Shown here: positions 2,026-41,681 of the stretch, piece after piece
Position numbering within the stretch: position 1 is the stretch's first letter
Layout: each line of letters starts with the position of its first letter
NCBI GenBank assembly: GCA_000388065.2
Contig: KB932204.1
Strand: one strand, 5' to 3'
Origin: Fonticula alba ATCC 38817
Lineage: Eukaryota > Protista > Nucleariida
Length of the DNA stretch: 64,000 nt
Position numbers and translations under genes: made by a program
Notes under the pieces: generated by a model
What the model was told of the DNA's origin: nothing
What the model saw: only the letters and a program-made list of their open reading frames with translations
The model's database searches: none

Positions 2026-5000
2026 ATGTCCGGCGACGGCAAGCAGTTCGACGCCGGCGATGTGCGGGCCATCCATGCGACCAAGTTCATTCAGGCCCGC
2101 GCGACCGAGTCCGCCTGGTTCATCAATCGCCTGAATGCCCGGTGTGTTGCCTCAACATCCTGCTCCGCGCCCCGCATGCACACATACAGGGAATTTCCGC
2201 CCACACATATCCATGCATCTCTCCCTCCCTGCTCGTGCTCTTTTTTCTTCTCCCTCTCACCCTCTCCCTTGGCCATGTTGAATGTTGGCCACCCTCCCCC
2301 GGGCGGCCCAGTGCCAACACCATGCGCACCTTTCAATCGGTCCCTCGGCATATGCGCCGGCGGATGGCTTCCTACAATCCAAACCGACTGCCGCGGCGTC
2401 TGCGCATGGCGGCCGCGCTGGAGAATGAGCGCCATTTGAAATCCGGCAGCGCGCCGCCCCAGCACGGAGTCGGCATGGCCAGCCGGCGCAAGCGCCGGCG
2501 TCCCACGCGTCTCGTATCCACGGAGTTTGCCCGACGCCAAGCGCGCACTGGACGCCAATGGCTTGAGACACATGTGTGGCATGCCAAACGCTTCCACCTG
2601 CATGATGCTTGGGGATGGCGCCTGCCGTTGCGGGCCACCGACAAGGGCCTGCGCTTTGTGTGGCGGTCCTTCCGCTCGGCGGCCCTGATTCACGATGCCT
2701 CGTATCAGGCCCAGGTGGAGGTGCTGGCGCGACCGGGCAGGACCGGTGCCGATGTTGCACACGTGGAGGCCCTTTTGCGTCGTGCCTTCACACTGGTACA
2801 GCACCCCGCGGTGAAGGGCAACTTGGCGTCGGGTCGGGCCCTGACGAGTGGCCGCGTCACCGAGGGCCTGCTCTTTGCCCCTGGCACCGCTCCGTTTGTG
2901 CTGCTCGGCCCTGTGCGGATCCTTTGGCGCCCAGCAGACGATGCGGAGCCCGGTCGGCGTGCATGGCTCTGGTGCCACCCCTCCATCGGGACTGCCGTGG
3001 CTCAGGCTCTCACTCGGGCCGGGCAGCAGGCGCTGGCTGAAGCCGAGTTTTCCGGCCTGGCTTTCAGTGCTCGGTTGCTGGCCGATCCGACTGTGATTGA
3101 CTTGGCCCCCGATGCGTCTGCTGACAACTCGGAGAGTTTGTCACCCAATCACGAACGGACTGGTCTCCTGCGGGTGTATGGCCCACGCGGGCATGCTGCC
3201 CTGGCCCAGGTGTTGCGCGTGTGCGAGGAAGCCACGTCGGCCCCGGCGGCCGCGCTCTGGCGGCAGCTTGCCCAGTTGCCTTCGGTCAGGGGCCTGGTTC
3301 CGCCGGGGCTGGTCATTGCTTTGGGTATTCGTGATCCGCGATTGGAGGCAACTGCCAGCCTGCGTCAGGGACGGCGCTCGGACCCAATCGCCGATTCGGT
3401 TGTCTCCTTGCAGAATGCCACGGCATTGCAGGCTGCTCTGGTGCGCATTGGGGCACCTTCTGTCCTTCCTCCCCACCCATCTTCCCGGATTGCTCCCCTT
3501 GCCTTTCCCCCTGCTCGAACTAACTCAAAAGCCCAGTCCACCCCTTCGGCCGAATTGGCCCGATCAAATCTGTGGGATGAGGGCACGCGGGTTCGCCTCT
3601 CGAGTGGCCGGCTGCCGGAGCGCACGGTGCAGCAGATGCGCGGCGGGTGTTTCGGCTCTGCCGTGCCCGCCGGGCACCCGGACGAGCCGTCGCCAATCCC
3701 CGTGTTCCTCGTGTCTCGAGTGGTCGGAAGTGGATCAACCGGCTCTGCCCCTTGTGTTCCGGGTGCCGGGACCGGGGTGGCTGATGATGGCTGGGATGTG
3801 ATCTTCCCGTGGGGGTATGCTCGAGATCTTCTTCGGGCGCTGGTTTTCGCCGGGGCCCGAGCCATTGGTGCGTGTGCTGTGGCTGGCTGTCGGCCGGGGG
3901 TCGGGCACTTCCCCCGCGCGACAAGGATGCGCCCATGCTGCATTATTTCTGACCCTCCCTGTCCAAGCAGGTACCCTCGATCTGGAGAGCCACTTCTTTG
4001 AGGAGGGCTACGCCAGCTTCCCGCGCGACGATGTGGACGCCCTGAGTTTCGATTCCTTTGATGACTTCCATGCGGAGGTGGCGCACGATCGCTATACCCT
4101 GCGTCCTGCTGCCAAGCGCCCGGCATTCGCCAACCTGGGCCTTCGATCCCAGGAGGTGGTCTACCCGCGCGACTTGGCTGGATTGCTCACAGGCCAGCAG
4201 GCGTGTCTTGGCTCTGAGCCGGAGGATGCCGAGGGGCCCCAAGCGTGGCCTTTTGCCTTGCCGGTGTGCCGAATGGCCGGCGACCGGCTGGGGCTTTTCC
4301 TCCTGCGCTCGGCCGCCGAGCGTCAGGCCGTCAGTCGAGCGGTCAAGCGCGTCAGGTCCGAAAGTGCCATGGTCTCGAATCAGGCAACTCGCTTGGGCAC
4401 GTCACTCGCCATCCTGCCTGGGGTTCTGCAGGAGGAGGTGGCCCGGGCAGTTGGTCGACCTGGGCTCCATGGTAGTCCGATGATTTCTTGCTGGTTCACC
4501 ATGGTATGTGTACATCTTCCCCTGTGTTCCCCGCTGCCGCTTGCCCTGGCCGCGTGCGCCAGCCTCCTGACTCTGGTGCCTCTCTCTCTCTCTCGCTCTC
4601 TCTCTCGCTCTCTCTCTCTCTCGCTCTCGCTCTCGCTCTCGGTCTCTCCCCCCACCCCCTGTGCAGCACTCTCGCGGGTCGCCCGAGCGTGGGGCCGAGA
4701 TTTTGCTTTTGCCCGCCCCTCTGCGTGATGCCCTGAATGCCATGGGTGCAGTGGCTGGGGCACCCGTTGAGCGTCGCCACTTGCGTGTGGCCGTGCGCCT
4801 GCTGCCGGCTCCCTTCGCCGATGGCGGGAACAATCCGGACTTGCCATGCCGCTTGCCGGTCCTCGGCTATGCCACCACGGCCGGCTACTCCTACTCAGCC
4901 GGCCGCGGGCGAGGAGTGGCTTTGGTATCAGCCTTGGCGGCTGCATCGGCTGTCTGCCTCTCGGAGCAGTCTGGCGCCGGGCCGCTGGCTGTGGATGTGC

Positions 5001-22539: not shown

Positions 22540-24439
22540 GGGGGCCGAGCATGCGCGTGAGTGCCCAGCCCAGGGCTGCGGCGAAAGGAACTGCCCGTCG
22601 CAATGTGCGCGGGAGAGGAACACGGGAGCCCGGAATCACACGACACAAGAAAGACCATTTGGTCCTCTAGAAACATTCGCCCCGAAACGCCATTAAAATA
22701 TAAACCCAGCCGTGGGCTCGGTCTGCTGCCCGAAGCATGGTTGTGATGGCGGCGGCGGGTGGGCGGGCAGGATGGCCTTGAGGCTTGAACAGCAGGGCGA
22801 GGGTTTTCCCCCCCCACTTGGTCCTCCTATTTTTGTTCTTTAGGTCGCGAAAGGATCCTGGCGGGCCGGGACTTGCTGCTCTTCGTTGGCACCAAAGGTG
22901 CGGGCGTCCCAGGCCGCAGGGCCACCGAGGAGAGATGCGCCAGCGCGGCAAGGGTCCACACCAGAATGGTGCAGGGACCTACGGGAAGATGGCCCGGCGG
23001 GATGCGGAGATGCGGCGGCGGGGACGAGCCTAGAGAGAGGCACCCTGGGCTGGCTAGGGCAATGCGGCTCCGGGTACTGCACCAGGCGCGTCCTTGGTCT
23101 TTGAACCAGAACCGCCAGATCGGACGATCCCCCCTTGGGCGGAGGGCGCCTTTCTTCGTTCGGTGCGTGTATGCGCGCGCCGGCCTCTCCCGGATGACCC
23201 TCCTCCTCTCCCACATTCGTGCTGAGACGCCAGCAGTTCGCGCACGGGCGAGGGACCCGGAAGGGGACATGAGGGGGAGCCCGGGACCATGAGAGCCCAG
23301 TCGCGTCCCCAGGGTTAGCGCGAATTGCCACCAGGCTCGGCTCATTTGGCTACTTCCCCCCCCCCCCCCGCCCATGGCCTGGCTCTGGGGGAGGCGCCGC
23401 GGCCCCACATGTGCTCTCCCCCCCCCCCTCCCCCCCCTGCAACGGGAGGGCCTCCCTTGGGCTCTCTTTTTTCGTATCCGCACCCTGGGTGCCCACCTGG
23501 GAGGATGGCCGCCCGACGCCCGGTCCCCAGGTCCCCCAGGGGGCCTGGCCAGTTCCCCACGAAGATGGCTCGGTGTTGCGTGTGCACGCGCTCGCCCCCC
23601 CCCCCCCCCCCAGCAGGCTCCAGTTCATCCCCCGCACACCACCAGGTCCTTGCCCTCCCCCTTCTGGCCTCCCTCCCGCCAGTCTCGTCACACCATCGAG
23701 CCGGCTTTTTTCGGCGCCCCTGTGCATCCCGACCAATGATGGCAGTTCCACCTTTCCCGAGAGAGTGCGTCACTCGACGGAGCTCGTCTTCCCCCCCCTC
23801 CCCCTTCCCCTTCCCCTCCTTCGCTCTCGCTTTCTCTCTCTCTCTCTGTCTCTCTTCTCCCTGCCCTTGGTTTCTCCTCCTCCTCTTTGCCTCCACCACT
23901 GCCTTCCTTCCTTCATTTTGTCCCGCATGTATTGGAAGGACAAGGGCTCCCTCCTTGCTGCACCTCCCTCACTTGCCGCCCCTCCCTCTCCGAGGATCTC
24001 CCCCCCCCCCTCCTCTGACCTTCGCCTTCCACCCTGCTCCCTCTCCCCCTCCCCTGTTTTCCATCGCACAGTCCACGGTCTTGCCAACCGCCTCCACCCC
24101 TCCCCCTCCCTCCCCGCGCAGCCAGTTCCACGCTCCGTGCGCTGTGTGCCGCCCCCCCGCTCCCCGGACGTCGCTCGTTCGCGCCCGTCCGTTCGATCTT
24201 TGCGGGAAGCCAGCCCTCTTGCGAGGCTCTGCGCCCCCTGCCTCTCGGCCCCCTCCTCCTTCGTGAGCTCCAGCGGCTGACTTAGTCTCGCGAGAGTAGT
24301 GATTGCGAGAGCGCGTGTGTGTAGCGGGTGTATTCCACCCCACCCTCGGACCTCTCTCTCTCCCCTCCCCTCCTAAGCCCGTGTGTGTGTGTGTGTGTGT
24401 GTGTAGCGTCCTCTCGACCTCCCCCCTCCGATTGCAGCG

Positions 24440-27400
24440 ATGTTTCGCCTTTCGCGCCTCGCCACCTCCAGTGCGTCATTCCCCGTCTACTGCTTTGACC
24501 TTCCCCGCATTCCCCATCTAGCGACATTCTTCGGCCTTCTGACCAGCATAACCTGCGCCTCCCCCCCCCCCTGCCAAGATTTCTCCCGGGGCTCGGTTCT
24601 CCTGAACCCCCTGCGTCTGCTCGCGGTGGCCGACACCGATTCCGTGGATGATCTGCCGTCGAGCCTTCGCCGGCGCTTCGCCTCCAGGTCCCGGCACAAT
24701 GACTACTACGGTCGCGATCACGACTATGATGATCATGACGATGAGGGTGATGATGACATCATGTCTTCCTCCTTCCAGGTTGATGACACCGAGGAGGGCG
24801 TGGCCCTGTCGTCGCCGCACTACCCGAATGCCGAGCAGGCCACCTACCTGAAGGAGGCCGTTGCCTGGCGCCGTGGCTCGCGCATTCTGCCGAAGGAGTC
24901 GATGCCGCTCCCGGAGCCCGATGTCGGCACCCCGGAGTTCCACCAGTTCGTCGCGAACATTGTGCGTTTCCGTTCCCTCTCTTTCACTCTTTCGGGTTTC
25001 ATCCATGCACCGGCTTTTGAGACCCCCACATTAACATGCTTGGCTGTCTGTGCATGCCTACCTCCCTCATGTAGGCGTCCTTCGAGACCCCGCCCACCTA
25101 CAGCTATGTGCCGATTGGTCCAATCACCTTCCGCCAGGCTATCCAGTCCACTTTCGGCGACTACCCGAGCTCGATCGGCCAGATCGTACGTGTCTTCCTT
25201 CCTGACCTACCCCCATGCCATGTATCCTCTCATACTGACCCTTCTCTCTTTCTTTCTCTCTCTCTCTCACTCCCTCCCTTGTCGGCTTGGCCTTTGATGT
25301 GTCTTTGCAGGTGAGCCTCACTCGCCGCGAGGAGTACCTCTACCGCCCGTCGGCTGCCACTGTCTTCAATGCGGCCGACCAGTACCGCAGTGTTATGCTC
25401 GAGGGCCCGGTCGGTTCCGGCAAGTCCATCGTCCTCTTCCAGGCCCTTCAGCGTGCCTGGGCTCGTGGTGATGTGGTTGTTTACATCCCCGATCGTGCGT
25501 GCAATCCGAGTCCCGACCTCCTCTGCCCTCCTCCGGCCGTCCGCTGCCATCCCTCCACCACCGCCGTCTGACCACCCACCATGTCCCGATGCGCTGGTGA
25601 TGGCCTTCCCTCCCATGTTTCCAGCCCACAAGTTCGCCTTCATGAAGTACCAGTTCTACTGCTCGGACAATGTGGCGACCAGCTCGTCCACCTACCGCTT
25701 CCCGCGCATGGCCTACGAGATCATGCGGGATATGTACAAGCTGAACAGCACCGACCCGATGGGCAACGGGGAGAACCGCCTGGCCCAGATCCCGCTCGTG
25801 CGCACTCGCCAGATTGAGGGGACCACCTACGCCAACACCGAGGGCTTCGACAACCTGGCCGATTACATTGGTGACCTGCTGCATCGCGTGGACTCCGGCG
25901 ACCTGTCCTTCAACTCCATCGAGTTGGCCGACAGCTTCCATGTGGTCATGGATGCCCTTTCGCAGAAGCTCCCCGAGAGGTACGCACACATGCACCCACG
26001 GGCCCTGCCTTTTCGAGTATGGGGCGGGGAAGGGAAGGTCCTTCCCCCTCCTTGCCCTCCTTGCCCTCCTTCTCCCGATTGCCCCGCTCATATCTGACCT
26101 TCTTCCCCGCTTGCTCTTTGTTGTCATGGGCCTCCTTCGGTTCGCCGCCTTCACAGCCAGCGCATTTCCATGCTGATTGACCGCGCCAACACCTTCTTCG
26201 GCAAGCTCGAGTACCGCGATTACCAGGGCAAGCCTCTGGTCATCGGTACCGGTACTACCCCGGAGTTTGACCGCATCCACAACATCTTCAGCGGCAACGA
26301 GCAGACTGTGCGTTCTTCCCTCTCTCTCTCCCTCTCTCCCTCTCTCTCTCTCTCTCCATCCAACTTTGCGCAACCCCCTCCTCCCATTGCTCCCGGCCCT
26401 GACTCTTCTCCTCCCTTTGTCTCGATATCTGTAGCACAACATCTCCGTCATCGGTGCCATGGACACTCGCACGCGCGGCATCCCGGCCACCCTGCCGGAG
26501 AGCCTGCAGTGCATCCGTGTCAATGTGCCGAACATGGACCGCCGTGAGTTCGGCCTCATGGCCATGAAGATCTTCACCGGTGACTACAACAATGTCCGCT
26601 CGGTGGAGGACCCGACGCGCACGTATGTCCATCGTCTGCGCCTGCCGGCCAACACCTGTAGCTACTTCTACACCAAGACCTCGGGCAACCCCCGGGCCGG
26701 TACTCTTGCCCTGGCGGTGGCTCCCTCGACCCAAACTCCGGAGCAGCTCCAGCGGAACTTCAACCTGCGCAATGCCCTCTATTACACCCGGCGTAACTCC
26801 ACTCGCGAGTATCGCCGCCGTCTGATGGAGGAGTACTTCCAGGAGTACCCTCTGCCGGTGTACGCCCGTGCCGACCCGCTGACCGGGCGCATGCTCGAGC
26901 ATGAGCCCGGCTCCAGTGTCCCCAACGAGCTGGACTATGTGACCTCTTCGCATGACAACCAGTCCGTCTCCGACTCCAGCGTGCACAAGCGCCACAAGCT
27001 GAACAGCACCCAGAAGCGCCTCCTCAAGAACATGGACAAGACCAGCCTGTCCATTCGTCTGGCGCGTGGTGGTCTGTCCGAGGCCGCGGGCTCCGAGACC
27101 GAGGAGGTGGCCACTGTCGCCACCGGTCCCGGCTCCAAGAAGAAGAAGGGCAAGGCCGAGTCCAAGTCCGCCAGTGCCCGGCGCGAGGCCACCATCGCCT
27201 TCCTGAAGGACCTGGCCGCCAAGACTCCGGAGTCCCAGCGCATCCACTACCCGCCGAACTTCGATGTGGAGGATGACGACGAGTCGGCCGCGCGCGAGGA
27301 GGCCCTGGATTATGTGCTCGACGTGCTGGAGCACTACCGCGAGTTCCCGGAGGAGGCTGGCGAGGGCCCGGACTTCGCCGAGTGGCTTCGTGAGATGGGG

Positions 27401-30400
27401 CAGCTCTACGAGTACCTGGCTTCCAAGCCGGTGGCTCCTTTCAGCTCGGCTCCGCGCCCCGAGTCGAATGGTGCCTTCCAGCAGGTGAACCTTGCTTCGG
27501 CCGATATGTCGACCTACGGCCCGCTCGGTCAGCCGCATGAGTTTGTGATTCAGAGCAACCCGCTCAAGGCCAACCATGTGCTGGGCAGCTTCCACTTCCT
27601 CCAGCTTCCGGATGGCATCTGGCCCGCGCGTGACACTCCTCTTGGTGACTTGACCGCCACCTCCTTCGGGGACTACACGTATGACGGCCTGGTTTTCCGC
27701 CCGGGTCCTGGCACTGATGCCGGCGTCCCTCGTGATCTGGCGGTCGAGCGTGCCGATCTCAGCGGTTTGGCTCGCCCAAATGCGGCGGCCAACTCGGAGA
27801 TCGATGCCGAGGCCGAGGCCACTTCCGCCGCCATCGGCACCGGCCCCGGTACCAACCCCTACTGGAACTACAACTCTGCTCTGGAGGATGGCGAGGTGCC
27901 GCTGACTGCCCGGTCACACTCCTTCGGCCTGCCTGATGGTGTGTACGATCCGTTTGCGCCGTACCGTCTGCGTGATGCTCCCCGCATTCCGGATCCCCGT
28001 CTGGACCTGCCTGCCGATGGGGAGGCCACTGGTGGGGCTGAGCCGGCTGTTGATGGTGATGCTCCGGTTTCCTCCTTCGACCAGCAGGACCTCTGGTATG
28101 GGGAGGATGAGCACTTCCAGCAGGCCATGCGCCGTGCGGCCATCTTTGGCCAGGGTGGTGCGGCTCTCCTGGAGGAGCGCGACCATCTGGACGCCACCCT
28201 CAAGGAGGTGTCCAGCTCTTCGACCGAGCCCGCGTACACTCGCAAGTCGTTGGTGGAGTTCCTCCGCCGTGAGGCGCCGCGCCATGACCCGGCCACCTTC
28301 CAGCGTCTGCTGCCCTTCCTGGTGACGGTCTTCGATGACCTGCATTCCACCAGTGGCTCTGCGCATACCACCCACCTGGCCCATGTGGAGGAGGCTGCCT
28401 TCGAGGATATCCAAGTCTTCAACCGGCTTCTGGATGGCGTGACCGATGACACGCTCCTGTCCTTCATGGAGCGTCTGGTTGGTGCCCAGTCCGTCGATGA
28501 GAGTGAGGACCAGCTGCTGGCCATGTCCCCGCCGTCGTGGCTTCTGCCGACTCTGGTCACCGCGCCTCGGCCCATCCGCGAGCAGATGTCCGCCCTCGGG
28601 CAGAAGGAGCGCTTCCAGCTGAACTACCTTCTGAACCACTGGTTCATGAATGATTGCCTGACCAGTGCTCCTGGGCGTTTCGAGGGGTCCGACGCGTGGA
28701 ACCGTCGCTCTGGTGCCTCCAACCCCATGCTGGTGTCCCTGCTGGACAAGGCTCTGCCCTTCGAGGCGTACACCTCGCCGACGGACCGTGCCCGTGCTCT
28801 GCGCCACCTGCTGACCGGGGGCGAGGGTGCTCCTGTGCCGGCTGTCCTGCTGAAGGATCTGACGGGCAAGGGCGACACCACCGCCCAGTCGCAGCTGGCC
28901 TCTCTGGCCGCGGTTGCCGCCGAGTCTGACGATCTTGGCCTGTACCTGAACCTGGCTCGGGATCTGGCTCGGCGCACGGCTGCCGTGAGCGAGGCCCTTG
29001 CTCGTCGTGAGACTCTCGACGCATCGGTCCGGCAGATGGCCCTCGTGCTGGGTAACAGCGCCATCACGGGCGATACCCATGGTCTGGACCGCGGCTCGGC
29101 CGGTCGGGTGCTTCGTGGCAACCCGCTGGATGAGGCTGGCTGGGGCGTCGATGGCGCCGCTCCTGTGCCGGCGGGCGACGATCGCCCGGTGACTGCTGCC
29201 GCTCTGCTGGACACCAACCGCCAGTATGAGGCCCTGCAGGCCCTGATGGGTCTGGCCCAGTCGGAGCGTGATCGTCTGGTGGCTGAGCATGATGCTTCCA
29301 AGAAGCAGTCTGGTCGTCTGCCCGGCAATGCCCGCTCGACCCCGGCGTATCTGGACAACGCGGACTTCACCGGCCACGCGGAGGAGATCCTGTCGGCCTC
29401 GGGCGCCGGGGCTGCCGACTCGCGCAAGAATGGCCTCTGGCCGACTGACGAGTCTGGTGCCCTGCGTGCCCCGGTTCCGATGGTGCCGCCGTCGCTGACC
29501 TTCGCCGAGGCGGTCCGCCATTCGGCCAAGTTCGCCGGCCGCTTCGACCGGCTGACGGCCTCTGCCACGGACTTCCTGCTGGACAAGTACACCGGTCCGG
29601 TGGTCGATGATCCGCAGCACATGGCCATCGCGCATCCGGACTACATGGGCGGCGTGACGACGCCCTTCCGCCTGCTGACCGAGCGCTTTACCCTGGCCTC
29701 GCGCATCATCAACGCCCTGGTGGCCGTGTCCAAGAACTATGCCCCGGAGGCCCACATCCTGCCTGGGGACTATGCCGAGAGTGTCATGACCCTGCTGGAG
29801 TTCCTGTATGAGCGCCAGTCCCCGGAGCTGGTTGCTGGTCGGACGCCGGTGTTCTTGCATTCGGCCTTCGCGGCCCTGCTGGCTTCGGACATCCCGCTGC
29901 CGGTGACGGTGGCCGCGGATACTCGTCCGCTGCTGGTGCGCGATGCCTTCAACCTCCTGCAGGCCATTGGAACTGGCCAGGCCATTGAGTCGAGCGGCCT
30001 CTTCGAGCAGGGTGCCCCGCTCCCGGCCCCGGCCCCGCCGATGCCTGGTAACATGAGCCTGCTGCACTTCCTGCTGGGCGTCGAGTCGCCGGTGTCGCTG
30101 GATAAGTTCGCCCCTCGGGCTGATATTGATCCCAGCCAGCCGGCCTTCTCCGTGCGCGATATGATCCTCAACCATCGGACCATCTTCGAGGACGAGTCCT
30201 TCTCTCTGGAGCCGGTTTCCCTGGTGGATGTGCTGGCTGAGACGCTGCAGGATCAGGCGGACCCGCGTGGCTCGCGGTCGCTGCCGACTCGGCCCTCGAG
30301 CACCGCGGCCCCGGTGGGCAGCGTGGCCAATGCCCTGGCTGCCGCTGGTCACATTGATGCCGGTGCGGCGGCCGCCCCTCGCGAAAGCTTCTACATGACG

Positions 30401-33049
30401 CCGACCGAGTTCTCCATGCTCGCCGGTGCCCAGGGGGAGATCCTCTTTGAGGATATGTACCACCTGCCGAACCCCTTCTCTTATGACCACACCGTGGAGG
30501 ATCACGAGAAGTGGAGCAAGTACAATGTGTGCTGGTCCAATGCCGAGGCCGCCCGGAAGATGGGCATCGCTCGGGTGGAGGACATTCTCCAGTCGGGCCA
30601 GGCCCTGCGCAGCAGTCGCGAGCTGGCCGCGCGCAGTGATTCCATGGCCGATCGCCTTCAGCGTCGTGTGGATGACTCCGCCGCGCGCGAGGCCGCTGGT
30701 GCTGGCGCTGCCGCCCCCCCGGCCGCCGCCCCGGAGGTGGAGGCTCTGCTGGACCAGCTGTCCGGACCGGAGGTTCGCAACCTCTCGGATCTGAGCTACC
30801 TGGCTGAGGTGGATCTGGCGAAGCTTCCCTCGCGGTCGGAGCGTCTGCTTGGCCGCGCGCTGGCGCATCGCCTCGGCCAGACCGGGGCCCTGGCCTCGCG
30901 TGATGCCGACTTCGAGGCTGCCTTCTTCATGCCGACTGACCGGGAGCGTGCCCTGCCGCGCGTCAACAAGCTTGGCCTGACTTGCCTGTCGGCGCCGACC
31001 GGTCCCCGGCCGACCGGTGCTCTGACTCACGTCAACCTGCAGGAGACCCTGCTGCCTCTGCTGAACCCTCAGCCGGAGGACTTTGACCCTTGGGTCAGCC
31101 CCTTCCCGGCGGATACCGGCGTCAACTCCCTGGTGTCGGATGCCATGGTTCGCCCGGCCAGCACGGTCCTCCCGGCCACCGGGCTTCCGAAGGTCGCCAA
31201 GGGTGCCTCCATGGCGGTGCAGCTCCCCTCGCTTCCGGCTTATGATCTGCTCAGCGAGCTGGTCCTGACCCCGCCGGCCGAGGTGGCCGGTGTGCGTGAC
31301 TCGCATGCGCCGCGTCTGGTGAACAGCCCGGCTCCGGCTTCCGGTCGGCATGGGATCAACCCCCGGCCGATGGTCCATGTGCCGGTTGGCGACAAGGGCC
31401 ATGCCTTCCCCGCTCGGCTGATGGCCGCTGATGCCTTTGTCGGTGGTGCTCTGTATGATGGCCGGCCTGCTGGTCCGGCTGTTCCGCTGGAGTTTGGCCG
31501 GTATGCCAAGGATGGCTCCTTCGAGCCCGGTGTGCCGGTCTTCGACCCGGTCACCGGTGCTGAGGTCGGCTTCCAGGCCGGCCACTTCAAGCTGGTGACC
31601 CTTGACCGGCGTGTTGCGGCGGATCCGCGCGCGCATAAGCTGGATCTGTCCAACCCGGCGGCCGTGGCCCTGGCGGCTCGTACCCCGGGCGAGGCGTCCT
31701 ACCTGCTGCCCTCGGTGTCGGTGTGGAAGCACCTGCACGAGAAGCAGGTTGCCCCCAAGCAGGTGAGCAACATGAAGCAGCAGAGCGCCATCCTGACGTC
31801 GCACAACACCAAGGCCCAGGCCCAGGTGCCGGGCCGGCGTCTGCACGACGGATCGGAGATCTTCGTTCCCGGGTTTGCGCTTGCGGATCGCTTCATCCCC
31901 GGTGCCGTGACTTCCGACGGTGCGCACGTCCGGTATGGTCTGCCGGCGGTTTTGCTGGCTGCGGTGCCGTCGCTGGCGGCTGCTGCCTCCGGGCAGCCTG
32001 GTCGCATGGCCACCAGCAACCAGCTGGAGGCCGCCGTGGCCGCCGTTCAGGCGGACCTGACCGCGCAGCTGTACAGCAGCGGTACCCCCGGCGGTCCGAC
32101 GGTCAACAAGGTCCTGGCTCTGTCGGATCAGGCTTACGCCGGGCTCCCGGCGGGCGATACGGTTTCGCGTGCGGTGCTCACTGAGGCCACTCGCCTGTTG
32201 ATTGCCCAGATGCCGGCTTCGGCCGAGCGCGACGAGCAGCTCAACGCCCTGCTGACCGCCGGGTCTTCGGCGGCCACCGGTCCGGTGAGCCGGTCGCTGG
32301 CGGCCGTGCTGGCGGCCACCTCCTCGGCCACTGGTGGTGCTGGTGGCCGTGCCCTCCTGTCGACGGCCGTGCCGTTTGCCTTCACCGAGGTGGTGCCCCC
32401 GAGCGCGGGTGCCGCTGGTGCCGGCTCTTCGTCGGCGGCCCTCGTGCCGCTGGTGCCGGCTGCCAATGAGGTGGGCTTCTCCTCGCGCGAGTACCGCTCC
32501 ACCGAGGAGCTTTCTCGTGAGACCGCCGCCGCCAAGAAGAACAAGGCCAGCTCTGCGCTGCTCGACTCGAGCACCAGCCGTCCCTTCCCGGAGATTTCCA
32601 CTCCGCAGTCGGCGTCGGTCCTGGCCAAGTACAACTTCGGTGTGCCGGCCACCCCCGATGGCACCCCGCTGGCTTCTAAGGCTGCCCTGCGGCCCTTCTC
32701 CAACCTGGACCTGGTGGATGACGAGTTTGTGGAGGGCACCTTCGACATGCTGACTGGTGCCTTTGTGGCCTGTCGCCCGGTCCCGGTGGCGCATCTGGAC
32801 ATCCTGGCCCGCGCTACCCCGAGCAAGCCGGTGCACATCCTCCGCCATCCGGCGCTGGATCTCGGCCCGGATGTGGCCTTCGTCCTGTCGGACGACCCGC
32901 GCCACGTGCTGGCGGCTGATGCCTTCAACAGCTCGGTCGTGCCCTTCCTGCCGACCGTGTCTCGCCTCCAGGAGGACGCCTTCAAGGCGGCCCCGGCTTC
33001 CATCAAGACGGCCCTTGCCACCGCGCAGGCTGGCAACCTGAAGAAGTAA
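24440..33049 (+). CDS. DAP3: Mitochondrial small-subunit ribosomal protein mS29/DAP3/Rsm23 with a roughly 2,100-aa C-terminal extension (predicted 2,609 aa); exons 24440-24470, 24579-24961, 25075-25185, 25311-25494, 25625-25979, 26157-26307, 26435-33049
   Basis: Presequence-like N-terminus MFRLSRLATS. P-loop MLEGPVGSGKSIVLFQALQRAWARGDVVVYIPD has the DAP3-type context. Further DAP3-like elements are YRFPRMAYEIMRDMYKLN, Walker-B-like MLIDRANTFFG and C-terminal TSGNPR. Six GT-AG introns with matching phases give one frame of 7,830 nt. Confidence 0.82.
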
Positions 33050-33813
33050 GCATTTCGGGCATACACACACATACCCACTCCCCCTCTCCCTCTCTCTCCG
33101 CTCTCTGCCTGGCTTTCTCTTCAGTATGTTGTCGTCTTGGCTGTGTGTGTGTGCGTGCGTGTGCGTATGCGCGCACACACGCGCCTCGTCGTCATCACCA
33201 TTTCCTTCTCTTCCCTCTTCCTCCGTTCCCCTAGATACTTCCCCTTTGCATGTGTGTATGTGTGTGTATCTCGGCGTGTAATGATGATATTGCCACCAAT
33301 GTGGTAATGGGCGAAGGGGCGCGGAGGGCGCAAGGGGATCCCCTTTTTGCCGGATGCGCGTGTGCGTGCGCGCTTGTCATGCGCACTGTCGATAGTGGTC
33401 TTCTCCTGCCCCCTCCCCTCCCCCCTCTCTCCGATGTGTCTCCTCCTCCATTAGTGTGCAAGTGGCCCTACGGGCGCTATTGTCTCCCGGCCAGCCTTTC
33501 CGGCGTATGCTCACGTTCATACGTGCGCGTATGCATGCATGAGGAGCAACACAAGTGCGCGCGCGCGCGCGGGCACACACACGCACACATACACAAGCTC
33601 CTTCTTCTTTTTCCAAATACATATATAGATCTTCACACCCCTCCCCTCATTTTGTGCGCAGGGGAGGAGAGTGGGTATTTCTCTGGGGGGGGGGGGGGGC
33701 GGGACGAGCGAGAAGGGTATGCATTTGCATGTGTAGGTATATATTTTGTGGTTGCCCAAACGAAGTCGGGCTTTCGGGAGAGGCCACCTGTGGCTGCACG
33801 CATGTACAGGGGT

Positions 33814-39108: not shown

Positions 39109-41681
39109 ATGAAGTATCTCGAGTTTGATTCCCTCGATCGAGTCAATGCCGACTTTGCTGGACGCCTCGACCTCGGTGGCGAAGCTCGCGTCACCTGTAA
39201 GATCGAAGCCTACAGCTGTGCGTGGCTTGCCCCTGCTCGTTTGGCCCTTTCCACTTGCTCGTTCTTCCCAGCGGATGCTGACCCCCCCCTCTGTCCCCCC
39301 CGTCTTTCCTGCTTCTCCTCCCAGGTAAAGCCGCTACGCAGGACAAAAGATTGTACAGAAGTCTAGAGTCAAGGTATAATCATGAAGCCACAGCCGTTGC
39401 TGCGGCGGCGGCGGCCGCTGCTGCCGCGTCGGCCACCCTCCCCGAGGGTGCTGAGCCGATTCCCATCGAGAACATCTCCCCGCTTGTGGGCGCTGCCTTC
39501 ATCCAGAGTGGCTCCGCCGCCGAGGGATCCCCGGTTCTCAGCTTCTCTGAGGCACCAGCCTCGGGTGCTAATCCAATTGAGGATGGCGAGCTGTCGTGGG
39601 AGATGCGCGACCGCGCGGCTTGGGCTGCGGCCACCGCGGCTTTGTCCACCTCCACCGCCTTTGGGCCCTTGAGCCACCCGGACGGCCGGAAGATGCTTCA
39701 TCGCCTGATTCTGGTTTTAAATGCTGCATACCCGGACTATGACTTCAGGTGCGTCTGCCCTTGGATTGTTTGTTTGTTTCTCTGCCCGATTCCCTTTGTT
39801 CTTGTCTTTCGCGAACCCCACCACGTGCATACATCCACGCATACATACGCCCTTCTTTGTCAAGCCGCGTCTGTGGGCACATCCACATGTTGGCTCAATG
39901 ATTAACCCTTCCGGTTCCTCTGCCCCTTCCCTCCCGTTCTCCCACACTCCCGTTCTCCACCCAATCAGTGGGGTTCGCCCTGATCAGTTCACCAAGTTGG
40001 ATGACCTGGAGCGGGTGCTCAACTCCCTGCAAATGGCCATCTCGCCGGAATCCTCCTTCTCCATTAGCTCCATCCTGCCGAATCTATCCCCCCCTGCCAG
40101 TGCAGCGGGCCAGGGAACCCTGTCTTTTGGCGGAAGCCAGGGCGCCGCCATGTCTGGAAATGGACTTTCCAGTGGGCCTCTCGTCTCACCGACCGGGGCC
40201 TCGACAGGCAGCAATGGAGCCTCGGATGGCGGTCGCTCCCTCGCCTCGTCAATCCCGATTGTCACGTCTACCAACAACCTGACCCCCTTCGGTGGCCACA
40301 GCCTGTTGGTGGTAACCCCGGGCACTCCGCCGGAGATCCCCCTCTCCGATGCGAGCCCATTCACTCGACTCTGTCTTGCATTGGATGAGGCCATCGGCCT
40401 GTCGGACTCGTGCGTTTCGGCCTCCTCGGGGCCTCCTCGGGGCCTCCTGATCCTTCCGCCTGGTTTGTTGCCCGTTTTACTGTGTTGTGCTAACCTCCTC
40501 GGACGGCATTTCCCATGCGCGTGCTTCTCCCTACTTCCTCCCACCACACTTAAAGGGAGATCTTCCTGTTCACGCCGGACCCCGATTCCGACCCATTGAG
40601 TGATCTGCAGCATGTCACCACCTGGTCTTATCACTACTTCTTCTACAGCAAGAAGAAGAAGCGTGTGGTATACTTGTCGGCCTTCTCGGAAAGGTACACA
40701 AGCCATCCCTCCCCCCCCCCTCCCCCCCGCTATCCTCCGCTATCCTCGGCCAAAATGCTTTTCCTCCTTTTGAGCGCCGCGACTAACACCATCCCCCACC
40801 CCGTCCTCCTCCCGTTACTATGTTCCTGTGTGTGTCTCTCCCTCTCTCTCTGCACCCTCTTCTTCAGCCTGTTGGTCAAGTCGGCCCCGCGTGACGTTGA
40901 TCTTGGTGATTCGGACCTGGATGTCGACTTTGACATGGATGAGGATGATTTCCCCACCTACTCCTCGGCCGATCACAGCTCCCAGGGCCTGCCCCACCAT
41001 CACCACCATCACCACCACTCGGACCGCGATCATGGGAGCGGCAATGGCGGCTCGGCCCCAGGCGGATTCCGATATGCGCCAAATGGCCGGGGAAGTGGAA
41101 GTTACGGCTCCGGCAGCGGTACTGGCCAAGCTGGCGTGTCTGCCTTTGGGTCCTACTCAGGAAATGCCAGCGGCGCCGCTGCTACTGGCGGTGGCCACAT
41201 GCACTCATTTTCCTTCTCCTCGCATTCGCTTCCGAGCGACATGCCTCCGCTGCTCCCGTCAATGCAGCCCGATCGCAATGGGGCGCTCTGGCGCGGAACC
41301 GAGGATGCCGGCATGACTGGCCATCACTCAAGTCAACAGCAGCAGCAGCAGCAGCACCACCACCACCGTCCTCGCTCGGGCACGGTGTTCGGCTTTTCCT
41401 CCACTGGGCCGCTTGTCCACAATGGTGGCAGTGGCGGGGACACACGTCTCTGCACTGGTGCCCCGCCCTCACCACCACCCGTTTCCCTGCCACCAGGCGG
41501 GAGGAAGCCACGAAGCAGTAGTTTCGGTCGACCTACTGGCCGTGCGGCCGTCGGCAAGTCCACTGCGCGCCTTAACAATGGCGCGCCGACGGCGGGCTTC
41601 AGCGCCGGTGCCGGCCGTGATCGGTCCAGTCCGGCTCCCTGCGATGACCCGATGTCTGCCGCACTTGTTCCCTCCCGCTGA
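39109..41681 (+). CDS. MAF1: Repressor of RNA polymerase III transcription MAF1 (spliced)
   Basis: Box A MKYLEFDSLDRVN..KIEAYSCK..DKRLYRSL. Box B FGPLSHPDGRKMLHRLILVLNAAYPDYDFS..VRPDQF. Box C LDEAIGLSDSEIFLFTPDPDSDP..WSYHYFFYSKKKKRVVYL. Acidic/His-rich tail. Confidence 0.93.

What the first reader, a model, noticed from the sequence alone, without database searches (positions are those of the whole stretch)
24440..33049. Giant mitoribosomal mS29/DAP3: GTPase domain fused in frame to about 2,100 residues of unknown sequence
Seen: a presequence-like N-terminus and a DAP3-like P-loop domain (GPVGSGKS near 25404; ends near TSGNPR at about 26690) run without a stop or intron into about 2,100 more codons. 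These encode complex, non-repetitive, apparently soluble protein in which I recognise no domain. The predicted length is 2,609 aa. Established: human DAP3 and yeast Rsm23 are about 400-490 aa, and mS29 sits on the small-subunit head. Inference: this is either an extreme lineage-specific mitoribosome expansion (a protein scaffold replacing or wrapping rRNA) or an imported polyprotein cut into mS29 plus novel proteins, as with the S. pombe Rsm22-Cox11 precursor. Either would be an undescribed mitoribosome architecture in this lineage.
Basis: partly seen in the sequence, partly recalled or inferred. Interest (0 to 1): 0.9.

Follow-up and report, generated by a model that had tools for sequence, protein, structure and literature searches.

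The report
Giant 281-kDa mitoribosomal mS29 in Fonticula
The amoeba Fonticula alba makes one spliced mRNA for a 2,609-residue protein that starts as the mitochondrial ribosome protein mS29, normally 350-540 residues, and continues into about 2,050 residues that resemble nothing else in public sequence data.

Summary
The window is Fonticula alba, and the gene is H696_03142, an annotated hypothetical protein of 2,609 aa. RNA-derived contigs from four runs (two samples) carry all six GT..AG introns removed. They run without a gap from the P-loop exons into the long last exon, and the spliced model equals the database protein exactly.

The whole 6.6-kb last exon has uniform coding periodicity (GC1/2/3 = 0.70/0.50/0.80) and codon usage. 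The 1,754-codon antisense ORF is a mirror artefact of codon bias.

The N-terminal domain is a divergent mS29/DAP3. Pfam PF10236 scores above its cut-off, the five best PDB matches are all mS29, and the nearest protein-language-model clusters are mS29.

Residues about 560-2609 (217 kDa, pI 5.2, Ala/Leu-rich, no repeats, no membrane segments) have no relative in Pfam, PDB sequences, the ESM Atlas, 5.8 billion proteins (word-indexed search) or JGI metagenome contigs. An exhaustive HMMER search of residues 700-1899 against 1.84 billion representatives also found none. AlphaFold without an alignment failed.

Whether the extension stays on the ribosome or is cut off cannot be decided here. I favour a retained lineage-specific extension. 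Unchecked notes from this scan say at least seven other small-subunit mitoribosomal proteins of this genome are also oversized.

The parts
24440..24470 (+). Exon 1. It holds the start codon and the first 10 residues of a presequence-like N-terminus (MFRLSRLATS...).
   Evidence: RNA contigs join 24470 to 24579. The model equals P0001. Residues 3-27 have 4 basic and 0 acidic residues.
24579..24961 (+). Exon 2. It holds the rest of the presequence-like segment, an acidic His/Asp-rich stretch (residues about 29-110) and the start of the conserved region.
   Evidence: Joints; sequence; residues 1-130 have pI 4.7.
25075..25185 (+). Exon 3.
   Evidence: Joints 24961/25075 and 25185/25311, both GT..AG, in all four RNA runs.
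25311..25494 (+). Exon 4. It holds the Walker A P-loop GPVGSGKS (25403-25426, residues 207-214) and the mS29-type motif that follows it (..VVVYIPD).
   Evidence: On this exon alone, Pfam DAP3 scores 23.9 bits. HMMER aligns it to Chlamydomonas mS29, chain 7pkq_x.
25625..25979 (+). Exon 5. It holds the middle of the DAP3 domain.
   Evidence: The Pfam DAP3 match covers residues 201-381. Joints.
26157..26307 (+). Exon 6. It holds a Walker-B-like ISMLID (MLIDRAN starts at residue 360, 26170).
   Evidence: Sequence. Calling it Walker B is inference by inspection.
26435..26896 (+). First part of exon 7, residues 406 to about 559. This is the presumed C-terminal half of the mS29 domain, including TSGNPR. 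No profile recognises it.
   Evidence: No Pfam or PDB hit for residues 375-620 or 380-580. The Atlas query 130-560 as a whole gives mS29.
26753..27208 (+). Basic linker, residues 512-663. It contains the three most basic 25-residue windows of the whole protein and lies on the disordered side of the charge-hydropathy line.
26897..33049 (+). Orphan extension, residues about 560-2609, plus the TAA stop at 33047-33049. It is 217 kDa with pI 5.2, Ala 14.8% and Leu 11%. It has no internal repeats and no membrane segments.
   Evidence: Coding signal. Transcript cover. No homologue. Composition.
33050..33617 (+). 3' untranslated region. By their lengths, the RNA contigs end between about 33494 and 33617.
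   Evidence: Contig lengths and record coordinates; word share 1.00 up to 33400; non-coding look of the sequence.
27914..33178 (-). Antisense ORF of 1,754 codons. It is not a gene but a mirror of the sense frame.
   Evidence: The sense frame has only one TTA/CTA/TCA codon in 2,204, exactly at 27914, where the antisense ORF ends. Antisense codon-usage scores are at most 0.12 bits per codon. It has no Pfam hit.

Best explanation
H696_03142 is the mS29 (DAP3/Rsm23) protein of the Fonticula alba mitochondrial ribosome. It is encoded by one seven-exon gene and one mRNA of about 8.5 kb.

**Layout of the 281-kDa product**
- A presequence-like N-terminus.
- An acidic spacer.
- A divergent but intact P-loop domain (Walker A GPVGSGKS, Walker-B-like MLID; residues about 130-550).
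- A short, very basic, probably disordered linker (residues 512-663).
- About 2,000 residues of acidic, Ala/Leu-rich, non-repetitive, soluble sequence found in no other organism sampled.

**Shown:** the gene structure, the transcript, the coding character of the whole ORF, the family of the N-terminal domain, and the orphan status of the rest.

**Inferred:**
- The mS29 domain docks on the head of the small subunit at the interface with the central protuberance, as mS29 does in all solved mitoribosomes.
- The extension stays covalently attached as lineage-specific protein mass at the periphery of the head.
- It was acquired by the gradual, largely neutral growth of coding sequence that appears common in this GC-rich genome, and it is not a substitute for rRNA.

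The confidence given (0.5) is for the whole statement including the inferred retention. The gene model alone I rate at about 0.97 and the mS29 family assignment at about 0.85-0.9.
For: - **Gene and transcript.**. The spliced RNA contigs equal P0001 and have no gap across the junction between domain and extension.
- **Coding signal throughout.**
- **mS29 identity.**
  - Pfam PF10236 scores 31.1 and 36.4 bits against a cut-off of 23.1.
  - The five best PDB sequence matches are mS29 of Chlamydomonas, Polytomella (two entries), cauliflower and Arabidopsis.
  - The first Atlas hit is an mS29 cluster at 0.94 with 198 shared features, and 20 of the 100 hits are DAP3-only clusters.
- **Orphan extension.**
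  - Residues 700-1899 hit only themselves in an exhaustive HMMER search of 1.84 billion representatives.
  - Word-indexed searches of 5.8 billion proteins hit only the protein itself.
  - Nothing turned up in Pfam, PDB sequences, the Atlas (0.60 and 0.72) or JGI metagenomes.
- **Retention rather than cleavage.**
  - The extension has no free-standing relative that would be a second product.
  - Residues 1000-2609 have hydropathy typical of folded protein.
  - Unchecked first-reader notes describe seven further oversized small-subunit mitoribosomal proteins in the same genome: mS26, an mS45-like protein, uS2m, mS31, uS10m, uS9m and bS18m.
  - The cytosolic eS24 next door is of normal size, 128 aa.
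Against: - No protein-level evidence exists. Size, cleavage, location and ribosome association are untested.
- Only half of the DAP3 profile is matched, and the best single PDB E-value is 8.7e-4.
- I could not search the rest of the Fonticula proteome for a second, canonical mS29.
- The extension is acidic, which is unusual for ribosomal-protein extensions.
- The protein language model gives it a low 'recognition' (1215-1370, in the range of shuffled sequences). AlphaFold2 without an alignment gives pLDDT 34-35. Ordered structure is therefore not shown.
- The cluster of basic segments right after the domain could be an internal processing signal.
- Extensions also occur in non-mitochondrial Fonticula proteins, such as Maf1 at 641 aa in this window and the unchecked notes. 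The size may therefore say little about the ribosome.
Confidence: 0.5

Rival explanations
1. The protein is an imported tandem precursor. The 281-kDa protein enters mitochondria and is cut by the processing peptidase in the basic linker (residues about 512-663). This would release an mS29 of normal size and one or more novel proteins.
For: - The three most basic 25-residue windows of the whole protein lie at 512-536, 590-614 and 639-663, directly after the DAP3 domain. The middle one, which continues in the sequence into ...IRLARGGLS, looks like an internal presequence.
- This stretch is on the disordered side of the charge-hydropathy line.
- Cleavage by MPP at internal sites of tandem precursors (Arg5,6; Rsm22-Cox11) is documented (PMC8734313, found).
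Against: - In the known cases both halves are conserved proteins that are free-standing in other species. Here the distal part has no relative anywhere.
- No cleavage motif was tested with a trained predictor.
- Basic tails that contact rRNA are ordinary in ribosomal proteins.
- If the other oversized mitoribosomal proteins of this genome are real, one polyprotein per ribosomal protein is less economical than retained extensions.
Confidence: 0.2
2. The extension is translated ballast. It would be a product of neutral ORF growth in a GC-rich genome with few stop codons. It would be mostly unstructured and dispensable, with no defined place in the ribosome.
For: - The stop-codon probability is only 0.025 per codon in this window.
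- Extensions are reported for unrelated Fonticula proteins (Maf1 at 641 aa; unchecked notes on MIS12, tRNase Z and MscS).
- Atlas recognition is low and AlphaFold2 confidence is very low.
- No relative exists to show conservation.
Against: - Codon usage and three-base periodicity are as strong as in the conserved domain over all 6 kb, so this is old coding sequence and not recently captured non-coding DNA.
- The hydrophobic content of 28-35% and high sequence entropy in residues 1000-2609 are typical of folded proteins.
- Keeping a 6-kb ORF open needs selection against stops and frameshifts.
Confidence: 0.2
3. The N-terminal domain is a DAP3-like or STAND-type P-loop NTPase paralogue with a non-ribosomal role, and the true mS29 lies elsewhere in the genome.
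For: - The Pfam match covers only profile positions 24-181 of 311.
- nSTAND_NTPase5 scores 26-29 bits on the P-loop.
- Yeast, Neurospora and mammalian mS29 chains are not among the PDB hits at E of 1 or less.
- The size and the acidic tail are unlike any mS29.
Against: - nSTAND5 stays below its cut-off of 34 bits and covers about 45 residues, whereas DAP3 passes its cut-off over 181 residues.
- All five best PDB hits are mS29, and the best Atlas clusters are mS29.
- The N-terminus looks like a presequence.
- A search with residues 1-560 found no protein of 308-980 aa with E of 10 or less. This argues against a close paralogue only. A divergent canonical mS29 would have been missed, since mS29 of other species was not found either.
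Confidence: 0.08
4. The long ORF is an assembly or annotation artefact that joins two genes.
For: None found. It was considered only because GC-rich genomes give long chance ORFs, and because a 1,754-codon ORF lies on the other strand.
Against: - Independent RNA contigs from two samples match the genome across the junction with no gaps.
- DNA runs of other samples also hold the stretch.
- An ORF this long has a chance probability of about 1e-24.
- The antisense ORF is explained by codon bias.
Confidence: 0.02

Closest known systems
mS29 / DAP3 / Rsm23 (Pfam PF10236), the GTP/GDP-binding protein of the mitoribosomal small-subunit head
   Same: - The P-loop domain has an intact Walker A and the mS29-type motif after it.
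- The Pfam score is above the family cut-off.
- The best PDB and Atlas matches are mS29.
- The N-terminus is presequence-like.
   Different: - The protein has 2,609 residues. Solved mS29 chains have 349-485, Andalucia mS29 has 353 and the Atlas clusters have 325-538.
- The C-terminal half of the profile is not recognisable.
- About 2,050 orphan, acidic residues follow.
- There is an extra acidic spacer of about 100 residues after the presequence.
Mitochondrial tandem precursors cut by MPP at internal sites (S. cerevisiae Arg5,6; S. pombe Rsm22-Cox11)
   Same: - One ORF with an N-terminal presequence.
- A mitochondrial protein followed by further polypeptide.
- A basic, presequence-like segment at the domain boundary (PMC8734313).
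   Different: - The distal part is not a known protein and has no free-standing relatives.
- No cleavage has been shown.
- The distal part is about four times the size of the proximal one.
Lineage-specific enlargement of mitoribosomal proteins in kinetoplastids, ciliates, apicomplexans and plants, as described in cryo-EM studies
   Same: A conserved ribosomal core domain carries a clade-restricted extension. Possibly many proteins of the same subunit are affected (unchecked notes).
   Different: - From my own knowledge, the extensions described there are tens to a few hundred residues, and the extra mass comes mostly from additional proteins. A single extension of 2,000 residues on mS29 is not described in the papers I could search.
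- Nothing is known here about the Fonticula mitochondrial rRNAs.

Membership tests
mS29 / DAP3 (PF10236) | Score above Pfam's gathering cut-off for the family profile | tested here: met
   31.1 bits on the whole protein and 36.4 bits (E = 4.6e-9) on residues 130-580, against a cut-off of 23.1.
mS29 / DAP3 (PF10236) | Match over the full length of the domain profile (311 positions) | tested here: not met
   Only profile positions 24-181 align, to residues 201-381. Residues 375-620 give no Pfam hit at E of 10 or less and no PDB hit.
mS29 / DAP3 (PF10236) | Nucleotide-binding P-loop (Walker A GxxxxGK[ST]) and a Walker B aspartate after a hydrophobic strand | tested here: met
   GPVGSGKS at residues 207-214 and ISMLID at about 358-363. 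The Walker B assignment is by inspection only.
mS29 / DAP3 (PF10236) | Closest solved proteins are mS29 rather than other P-loop NTPases | tested here: met
   The top five of six PDB hits are mS29: 7pkq_x at E = 8.7e-4, then 8a22, 8apo, 9evs and 6xyw. The Atlas first hit is an mS29 cluster at 0.94.
mS29 / DAP3 (PF10236) | Predicted fold superposes on mS29 structures | tested here: inconclusive
   AlphaFold2 without an alignment gave pLDDT 34 and did not form the domain. No homologues were available for an alignment, so no fold search was run.
mS29 / DAP3 (PF10236) | Mitochondrial targeting and presence in the small subunit of the mitoribosome | not testable with these tools
   Only the composition of the N-terminus is available: 4 basic and 0 acidic residues in residues 3-27.
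mS29 / DAP3 (PF10236) | Single orthologue in the genome | not tested
   The Fonticula proteome could not be searched as a set. A word-indexed search with residues 1-560 found no other protein.
Mitochondrial tandem precursor (Arg5,6 / Rsm22-Cox11 type) | Two recognisable proteins that are free-standing in other species, joined in one ORF | tested here: not met
   The distal 2,050 residues have no relative in any collection searched.
Mitochondrial tandem precursor (Arg5,6 / Rsm22-Cox11 type) | Internal presequence-like segment with an MPP site between the parts | tested here: inconclusive
   The strongest basic clusters of the protein lie at residues 512-663. No trained cleavage-site predictor was available.
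Mitochondrial tandem precursor (Arg5,6 / Rsm22-Cox11 type) | Separate mature products observed | not testable with these tools
   This needs immunoblotting or proteomics.

The most novel reading that the evidence does not exclude
The small subunit of the Fonticula alba mitoribosome may be a protein giant. mS29 and at least seven other small-subunit proteins (mS26, an mS45/mS22-like protein, uS2m, mS31, uS10m, uS9m, bS18m) would each keep an orphan extension of 0.4 to 2 thousand residues in the mature particle. Together these would add roughly 1 MDa of lineage-specific protein, much of it on the head. That would be an architecture seen in no solved mitoribosome.
Probability: 0.3. Interest if true: 0.8.

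Novelty: new variant of a known kind. Interest (0 to 1): 0.6.

Why it matters
mS29 is one of the few mitochondrion-specific ribosomal proteins present in essentially all eukaryotes. It forms the contact between the small-subunit head and the central protuberance (bioRxiv 10.64898/2026.10.06.756942).

- **If the extension stays attached:** a version five to seven times the usual size would place more than 200 kDa of unknown protein next to the tRNA and mRNA path and the intersubunit bridge.
- **If several other small-subunit proteins of the same organism are similarly enlarged:** Fonticula would be a new extreme in mitoribosome evolution, within the sister lineage of fungi. It would be a clean case for asking whether such growth is adaptive or constructive-neutral.
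- **If the protein is cleaved instead:** it would be by far the largest mitochondrial tandem precursor and a source of unknown mitochondrial proteins.

Either outcome can be tested directly in a culturable organism.

Tried and rejected
- **Pfam on raw ORFs and single exons.** Nothing appeared except a borderline DAP3 hit on the P-loop exon. This was resolved once the spliced protein was available.
- **My first splice model.** It had one exon end wrong by a base and missed the 108-nt intron 24471-24578. Both were corrected from the RNA joints.
- **Homologue searches for an alignment of the mS29 domain.** None was found, so AlphaFold2 had to run on single sequences. It gave unusable models with pLDDT 34-35, so I ran no fold searches.
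- **Searches for relatives of the extension.**
  - Word-indexed searches seeded from residues 406-905 (scored over 406-2609) and from 1850-2609.
  - Exhaustive HMMER on residues 700-1899.
  - The Atlas on 570-2609 and 1000-1700.
  - PDB sequences on three pieces.
  - Pfam on ten pieces.
  - JGI metagenome contigs.
  - All came back empty.
- **A PCNA N-terminal match to residues 1052-1101.** It scored E = 4.9e-5, but only against an artificial linked PCNA trimer. Against single PCNA it scored 10-11 bits with E of about 1-2, and there was no Pfam PCNA hit. I reject it as chance.
- **Internal repeats.** None by BLASTP against itself. Tandem DNA repeats occur only in introns.
- **Antisense ORF as a gene.** Rejected.
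- **Literature.** No paper in the library links Fonticula to mitoribosomal proteins beyond passing mentions.
- **Not covered.** Residues 560-699 were covered only by the word-indexed search, Pfam, PDB sequences and (from residue 570) the Atlas, and 1900-2609 additionally by the metagenome scan, but neither by the exhaustive search. The one read-laying run covered only up to 30399, so the rest of the ORF rests on the 31-mer word share.

Full report
**What is there.** The window is nuclear DNA of Fonticula alba. A search with the long exon returned a single protein, P0001, at 100% identity. This is H696_03142, 'hypothetical protein', 2,609 aa, on a 3.07-Mb contig of GCA_000388065.2.

Reading the sequence, I built a splice model with canonical GT..AG introns and CTRAC-like branch sites. 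RNA data then corrected it to seven exons: 24440-24470, 24579-24961, 25075-25185, 25311-25494, 25625-25979, 26157-26307 and 26435-33049. The translation of this model is identical to P0001. GPVGSGKS is at 25403-25426 and TSGNPR at 26678-26695. The last exon starts at 26435 and the length is 2,609 aa.

**Is it more than chance?** The window has 62-68% G+C here, so long ORFs need scrutiny, and a 1,754-codon ORF lies antisense.

- With the window's base composition, a stop is expected every 40 codons. An open stretch of 2,204 codons has probability about 1e-24.
- G+C at codon positions 1/2/3 is 0.70/0.50/0.80 overall and similar in every 600-nt block. Introns and the 3' flank have 0.586.
- I built a codon table from the N-terminal 560 codons plus the POP1-like gene of the window. 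With it, the extension scores +0.41 to +0.57 bits per codon in the annotated frame in each 900-nt window scored. The other five frames score at most +0.12.
- The antisense ORF is a mirror effect. Its stops would come from sense codons TTA, CTA and TCA. Only one of these exists among 2,204 codons, at 27914, exactly where the antisense ORF ends.

**Transcript evidence.**

- Four RNA runs from two samples of the same organism (X6-X9) hold 90% of the sampled words of 25300-30300. The missing tenth matches the three introns in that stretch.
- Laid on 24400-30399, each run gives one contig of 8.3-8.7 kb. Each contig skips the six introns 24471-24578, 24962-25074, 25186-25310, 25495-25624, 25980-26156 and 26308-26434. 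It then continues from 26435 to the end of the stretch with no gap.
- The only difference from the genome is T>G at 26707, a third codon position (CTT to CTG).
- The removed introns show that these contigs come from spliced RNA, not from contaminating DNA.
- For 30300-33400 the same runs hold 100% of the sampled words. The contig lengths place the 3' ends at about 33494-33617, some 450-570 nt past the TAA at 33047-33049.
- So the transcript neither ends nor is spliced shortly after the DAP3 domain, and there is no frameshift between RNA and genome.
- Limits: these are assembled contigs, so rare isoforms would be invisible. The part beyond 30399 rests on word content only.

**The N-terminal domain.**

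- Pfam finds PF10236 (DAP3) on the whole protein at 31.1 bits, and on residues 130-580 at 36.4 bits (E = 4.6e-9). The curated cut-off is 23.1. The match aligns residues 201-381 to profile positions 24-181 of 311.
- The runner-up, nSTAND_NTPase5, covers only about 45 residues around the P-loop and stays below its cut-off.
- Against all PDB sequences, the five best hits of residues 1-600 are mS29 chains: Chlamydomonas 7pkq_x at E = 8.7e-4, then Polytomella, cauliflower and Arabidopsis. The alignment shows the mS29-type P-loop context, GP.G.GKS followed by ..vvY.P.
- The ESM-Atlas feature search with residues 130-560 gives an mS29 cluster first (0.94, 198 shared features, recognition 2886). Twenty of the 100 hits are DAP3-only clusters.
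- The C-terminal half of the domain (residues about 380-560) is not recognised by any profile. No close homologue exists to build an alignment. AlphaFold2 on the single sequence failed with pLDDT 34.
- I therefore rate 'mS29 homologue' at about 0.85 to 0.9. 'The only mS29 of this organism' is untested.
- The N-terminus (MFRLSRLATSNFSRGSVLLNPLRLLAV) has four basic and no acidic residues. It is followed by an odd Asp/His-rich acidic stretch.

**The extension.** Residues about 560-2609 weigh 217 kDa and have pI 5.2. The composition is Ala 14.8%, Leu 11%, Ser 8.4% and Pro 8%. There is no hydrophobic segment suggestive of a membrane span beyond one borderline Ala-rich window. There are no internal repeats and no tandem DNA repeats in the exon.

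- By a crude charge-hydropathy test, residues 450-700 and 850-1000 fall on the disordered side, and 1000-2609 on the folded side.
- The three most basic 25-residue windows of the whole protein lie together at 512-536, 590-614 and 639-663, right behind the DAP3 domain.
- Nothing related was found anywhere:
  - Pfam on the whole protein and on ten pieces.
  - PDB sequences. The one apparent hit, to the PCNA N-terminus, is inflated by a linked trimer and is at chance level against single PCNA.
  - The Atlas, at 0.60 and 0.72 with recognition 1215-1370.
  - Word-indexed searches of 5.8 billion proteins.
  - An exhaustive HMMER pass of residues 700-1899 over 1.84 billion representatives.
  - JGI metagenome contigs.
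- AlphaFold2 on residues 1410-2609 gave pLDDT 35.
- The extension is therefore a true orphan at the sequence level, and its fold is unknown.

**Context.**

- The neighbouring genes are unrelated: eS24 (128 aa), an unknown 114-aa protein, an unknown 478-aa protein on the other strand, Maf1 (641 aa) and Yos1.
- Cytosolic eS24 has a normal size. Maf1 is about twice the length I remember for yeast or human.
- First-stage notes of this scan, all unchecked, flag seven further oversized small-subunit mitoribosomal proteins in the same genome: mS26 +1,830 aa, an mS45-like protein of 2,100 aa, uS2m +870, mS31 in a protein of more than 1,300 aa, uS10m +440, uS9m at 973 aa, and bS18m at about 580 aa. They also flag extensions on some non-mitochondrial proteins.
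- I could not retrieve those proteins, so they are leads only.
- No paper in the searchable library discusses Fonticula mitoribosomal proteins. The recent pan-eukaryotic survey of mitoribosomes does not include the species.

**Interpretation.** The gene, the transcript, the coding nature of the ORF, the mS29 family of the first domain and the orphan nature of the rest are shown. What the extension does is inference.

- **Retained extension (about 0.5).** I favour a retained, lineage-specific extension sitting at the periphery of the small-subunit head.
  - The distal part has no identity as a separate protein anywhere.
  - Most of it has the hydropathy of folded protein.
  - Several other small-subunit proteins may show the same growth.
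- **Cleaved polyprotein (about 0.2).** It gains some support from the basic, presequence-like linker and from the known ability of MPP to cut internal sites (PMC8734313). It lacks the hallmark of known tandem precursors, which is two conserved partners.
- **Dispensable ballast from neutral ORF growth (about 0.2).** It fits the genome-wide tendency and the poor 'recognition' by learned models. It must still account for 6 kb of ORF kept open with mature codon usage.
- **Non-ribosomal DAP3-like paralogue (about 0.08) and artefact (about 0.02).** Both are unlikely.
- The idea that the extension replaces or wraps rRNA has no support. It is acidic, and nothing is known here about the mitochondrial rRNAs.

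**Verdict.** The finding is real and, as far as I could search, undescribed: an mS29 five to seven times the usual size, with solid transcript support. It is a new variant of a known protein, not a new kind of system, and its mechanism is open. Interest is moderate to high (0.6). It would rise if the subunit-wide pattern is confirmed.

Noticed in passing
window 27914-33178 (- strand): A 1,754-codon antisense ORF mirrors the sense frame. It ends at the only TTA/CTA/TCA sense codon among 2,204. It is a textbook example of how GC3-rich codon bias creates long false ORFs on the opposite strand in this genome.
   Followed up: yes
window 26753-27208 (residues 512-663): The three most basic 25-residue windows of the 2,609-aa protein cluster directly behind the DAP3 domain. 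One of them (KRHKLNSTQKRLLKNMDKTSLSIRL, followed by ARGGLS) looks like an internal presequence. It could be an rRNA-binding tail or an internal processing signal.
   Followed up: partly
window 26707: All four RNA-derived contigs read G where the genome has T. The change is synonymous (CTT to CTG) and is probably a strain or assembly difference rather than editing.
   Followed up: no
window 25300-30300: Near-identical DNA is held by runs labelled with another organism (X5, X10-X12; 0.76-0.92 of words), by a soil metagenome (X13; 0.74) and by a sediment metagenome (X14; 0.55). Fonticula-like cells carrying this gene, extension included, occur in environmental samples. These data could give a dN/dS for the extension.
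   Followed up: no
window 39109-41681 (L001:24670-27242): The Maf1 homologue is annotated at 641 aa, roughly twice the size I recall for yeast or human Maf1, while cytosolic eS24 nearby is a normal 128 aa. This hints that protein lengthening in this genome is widespread but uneven.
   Followed up: no
window 29591-29740 (residues 1052-1101): There is a 50-residue resemblance to the N-terminus of PCNA, at 10-11 bits against single PCNA chains. The E-value of 4.9e-5 was obtained only against an engineered linked trimer, and there is no Pfam PCNA hit. I judge it chance.
   Followed up: yes
window 24380-24410, 26320-26356, 33050-33260: (GT)n and (CT)n microsatellites and CT-rich tracts mark the 5' flank, the introns and the 3' UTR. 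The introns are 108-177 nt with GTGCGT/GTACGT donors and CTGAC/TTAAC-type branch sites.
   Followed up: no
window 2142-4001: An ORF with a clear POP1 N-terminal domain (RNase P/MRP subunit; E = 6.5e-27). I used it only as a codon-usage reference.
   Followed up: no
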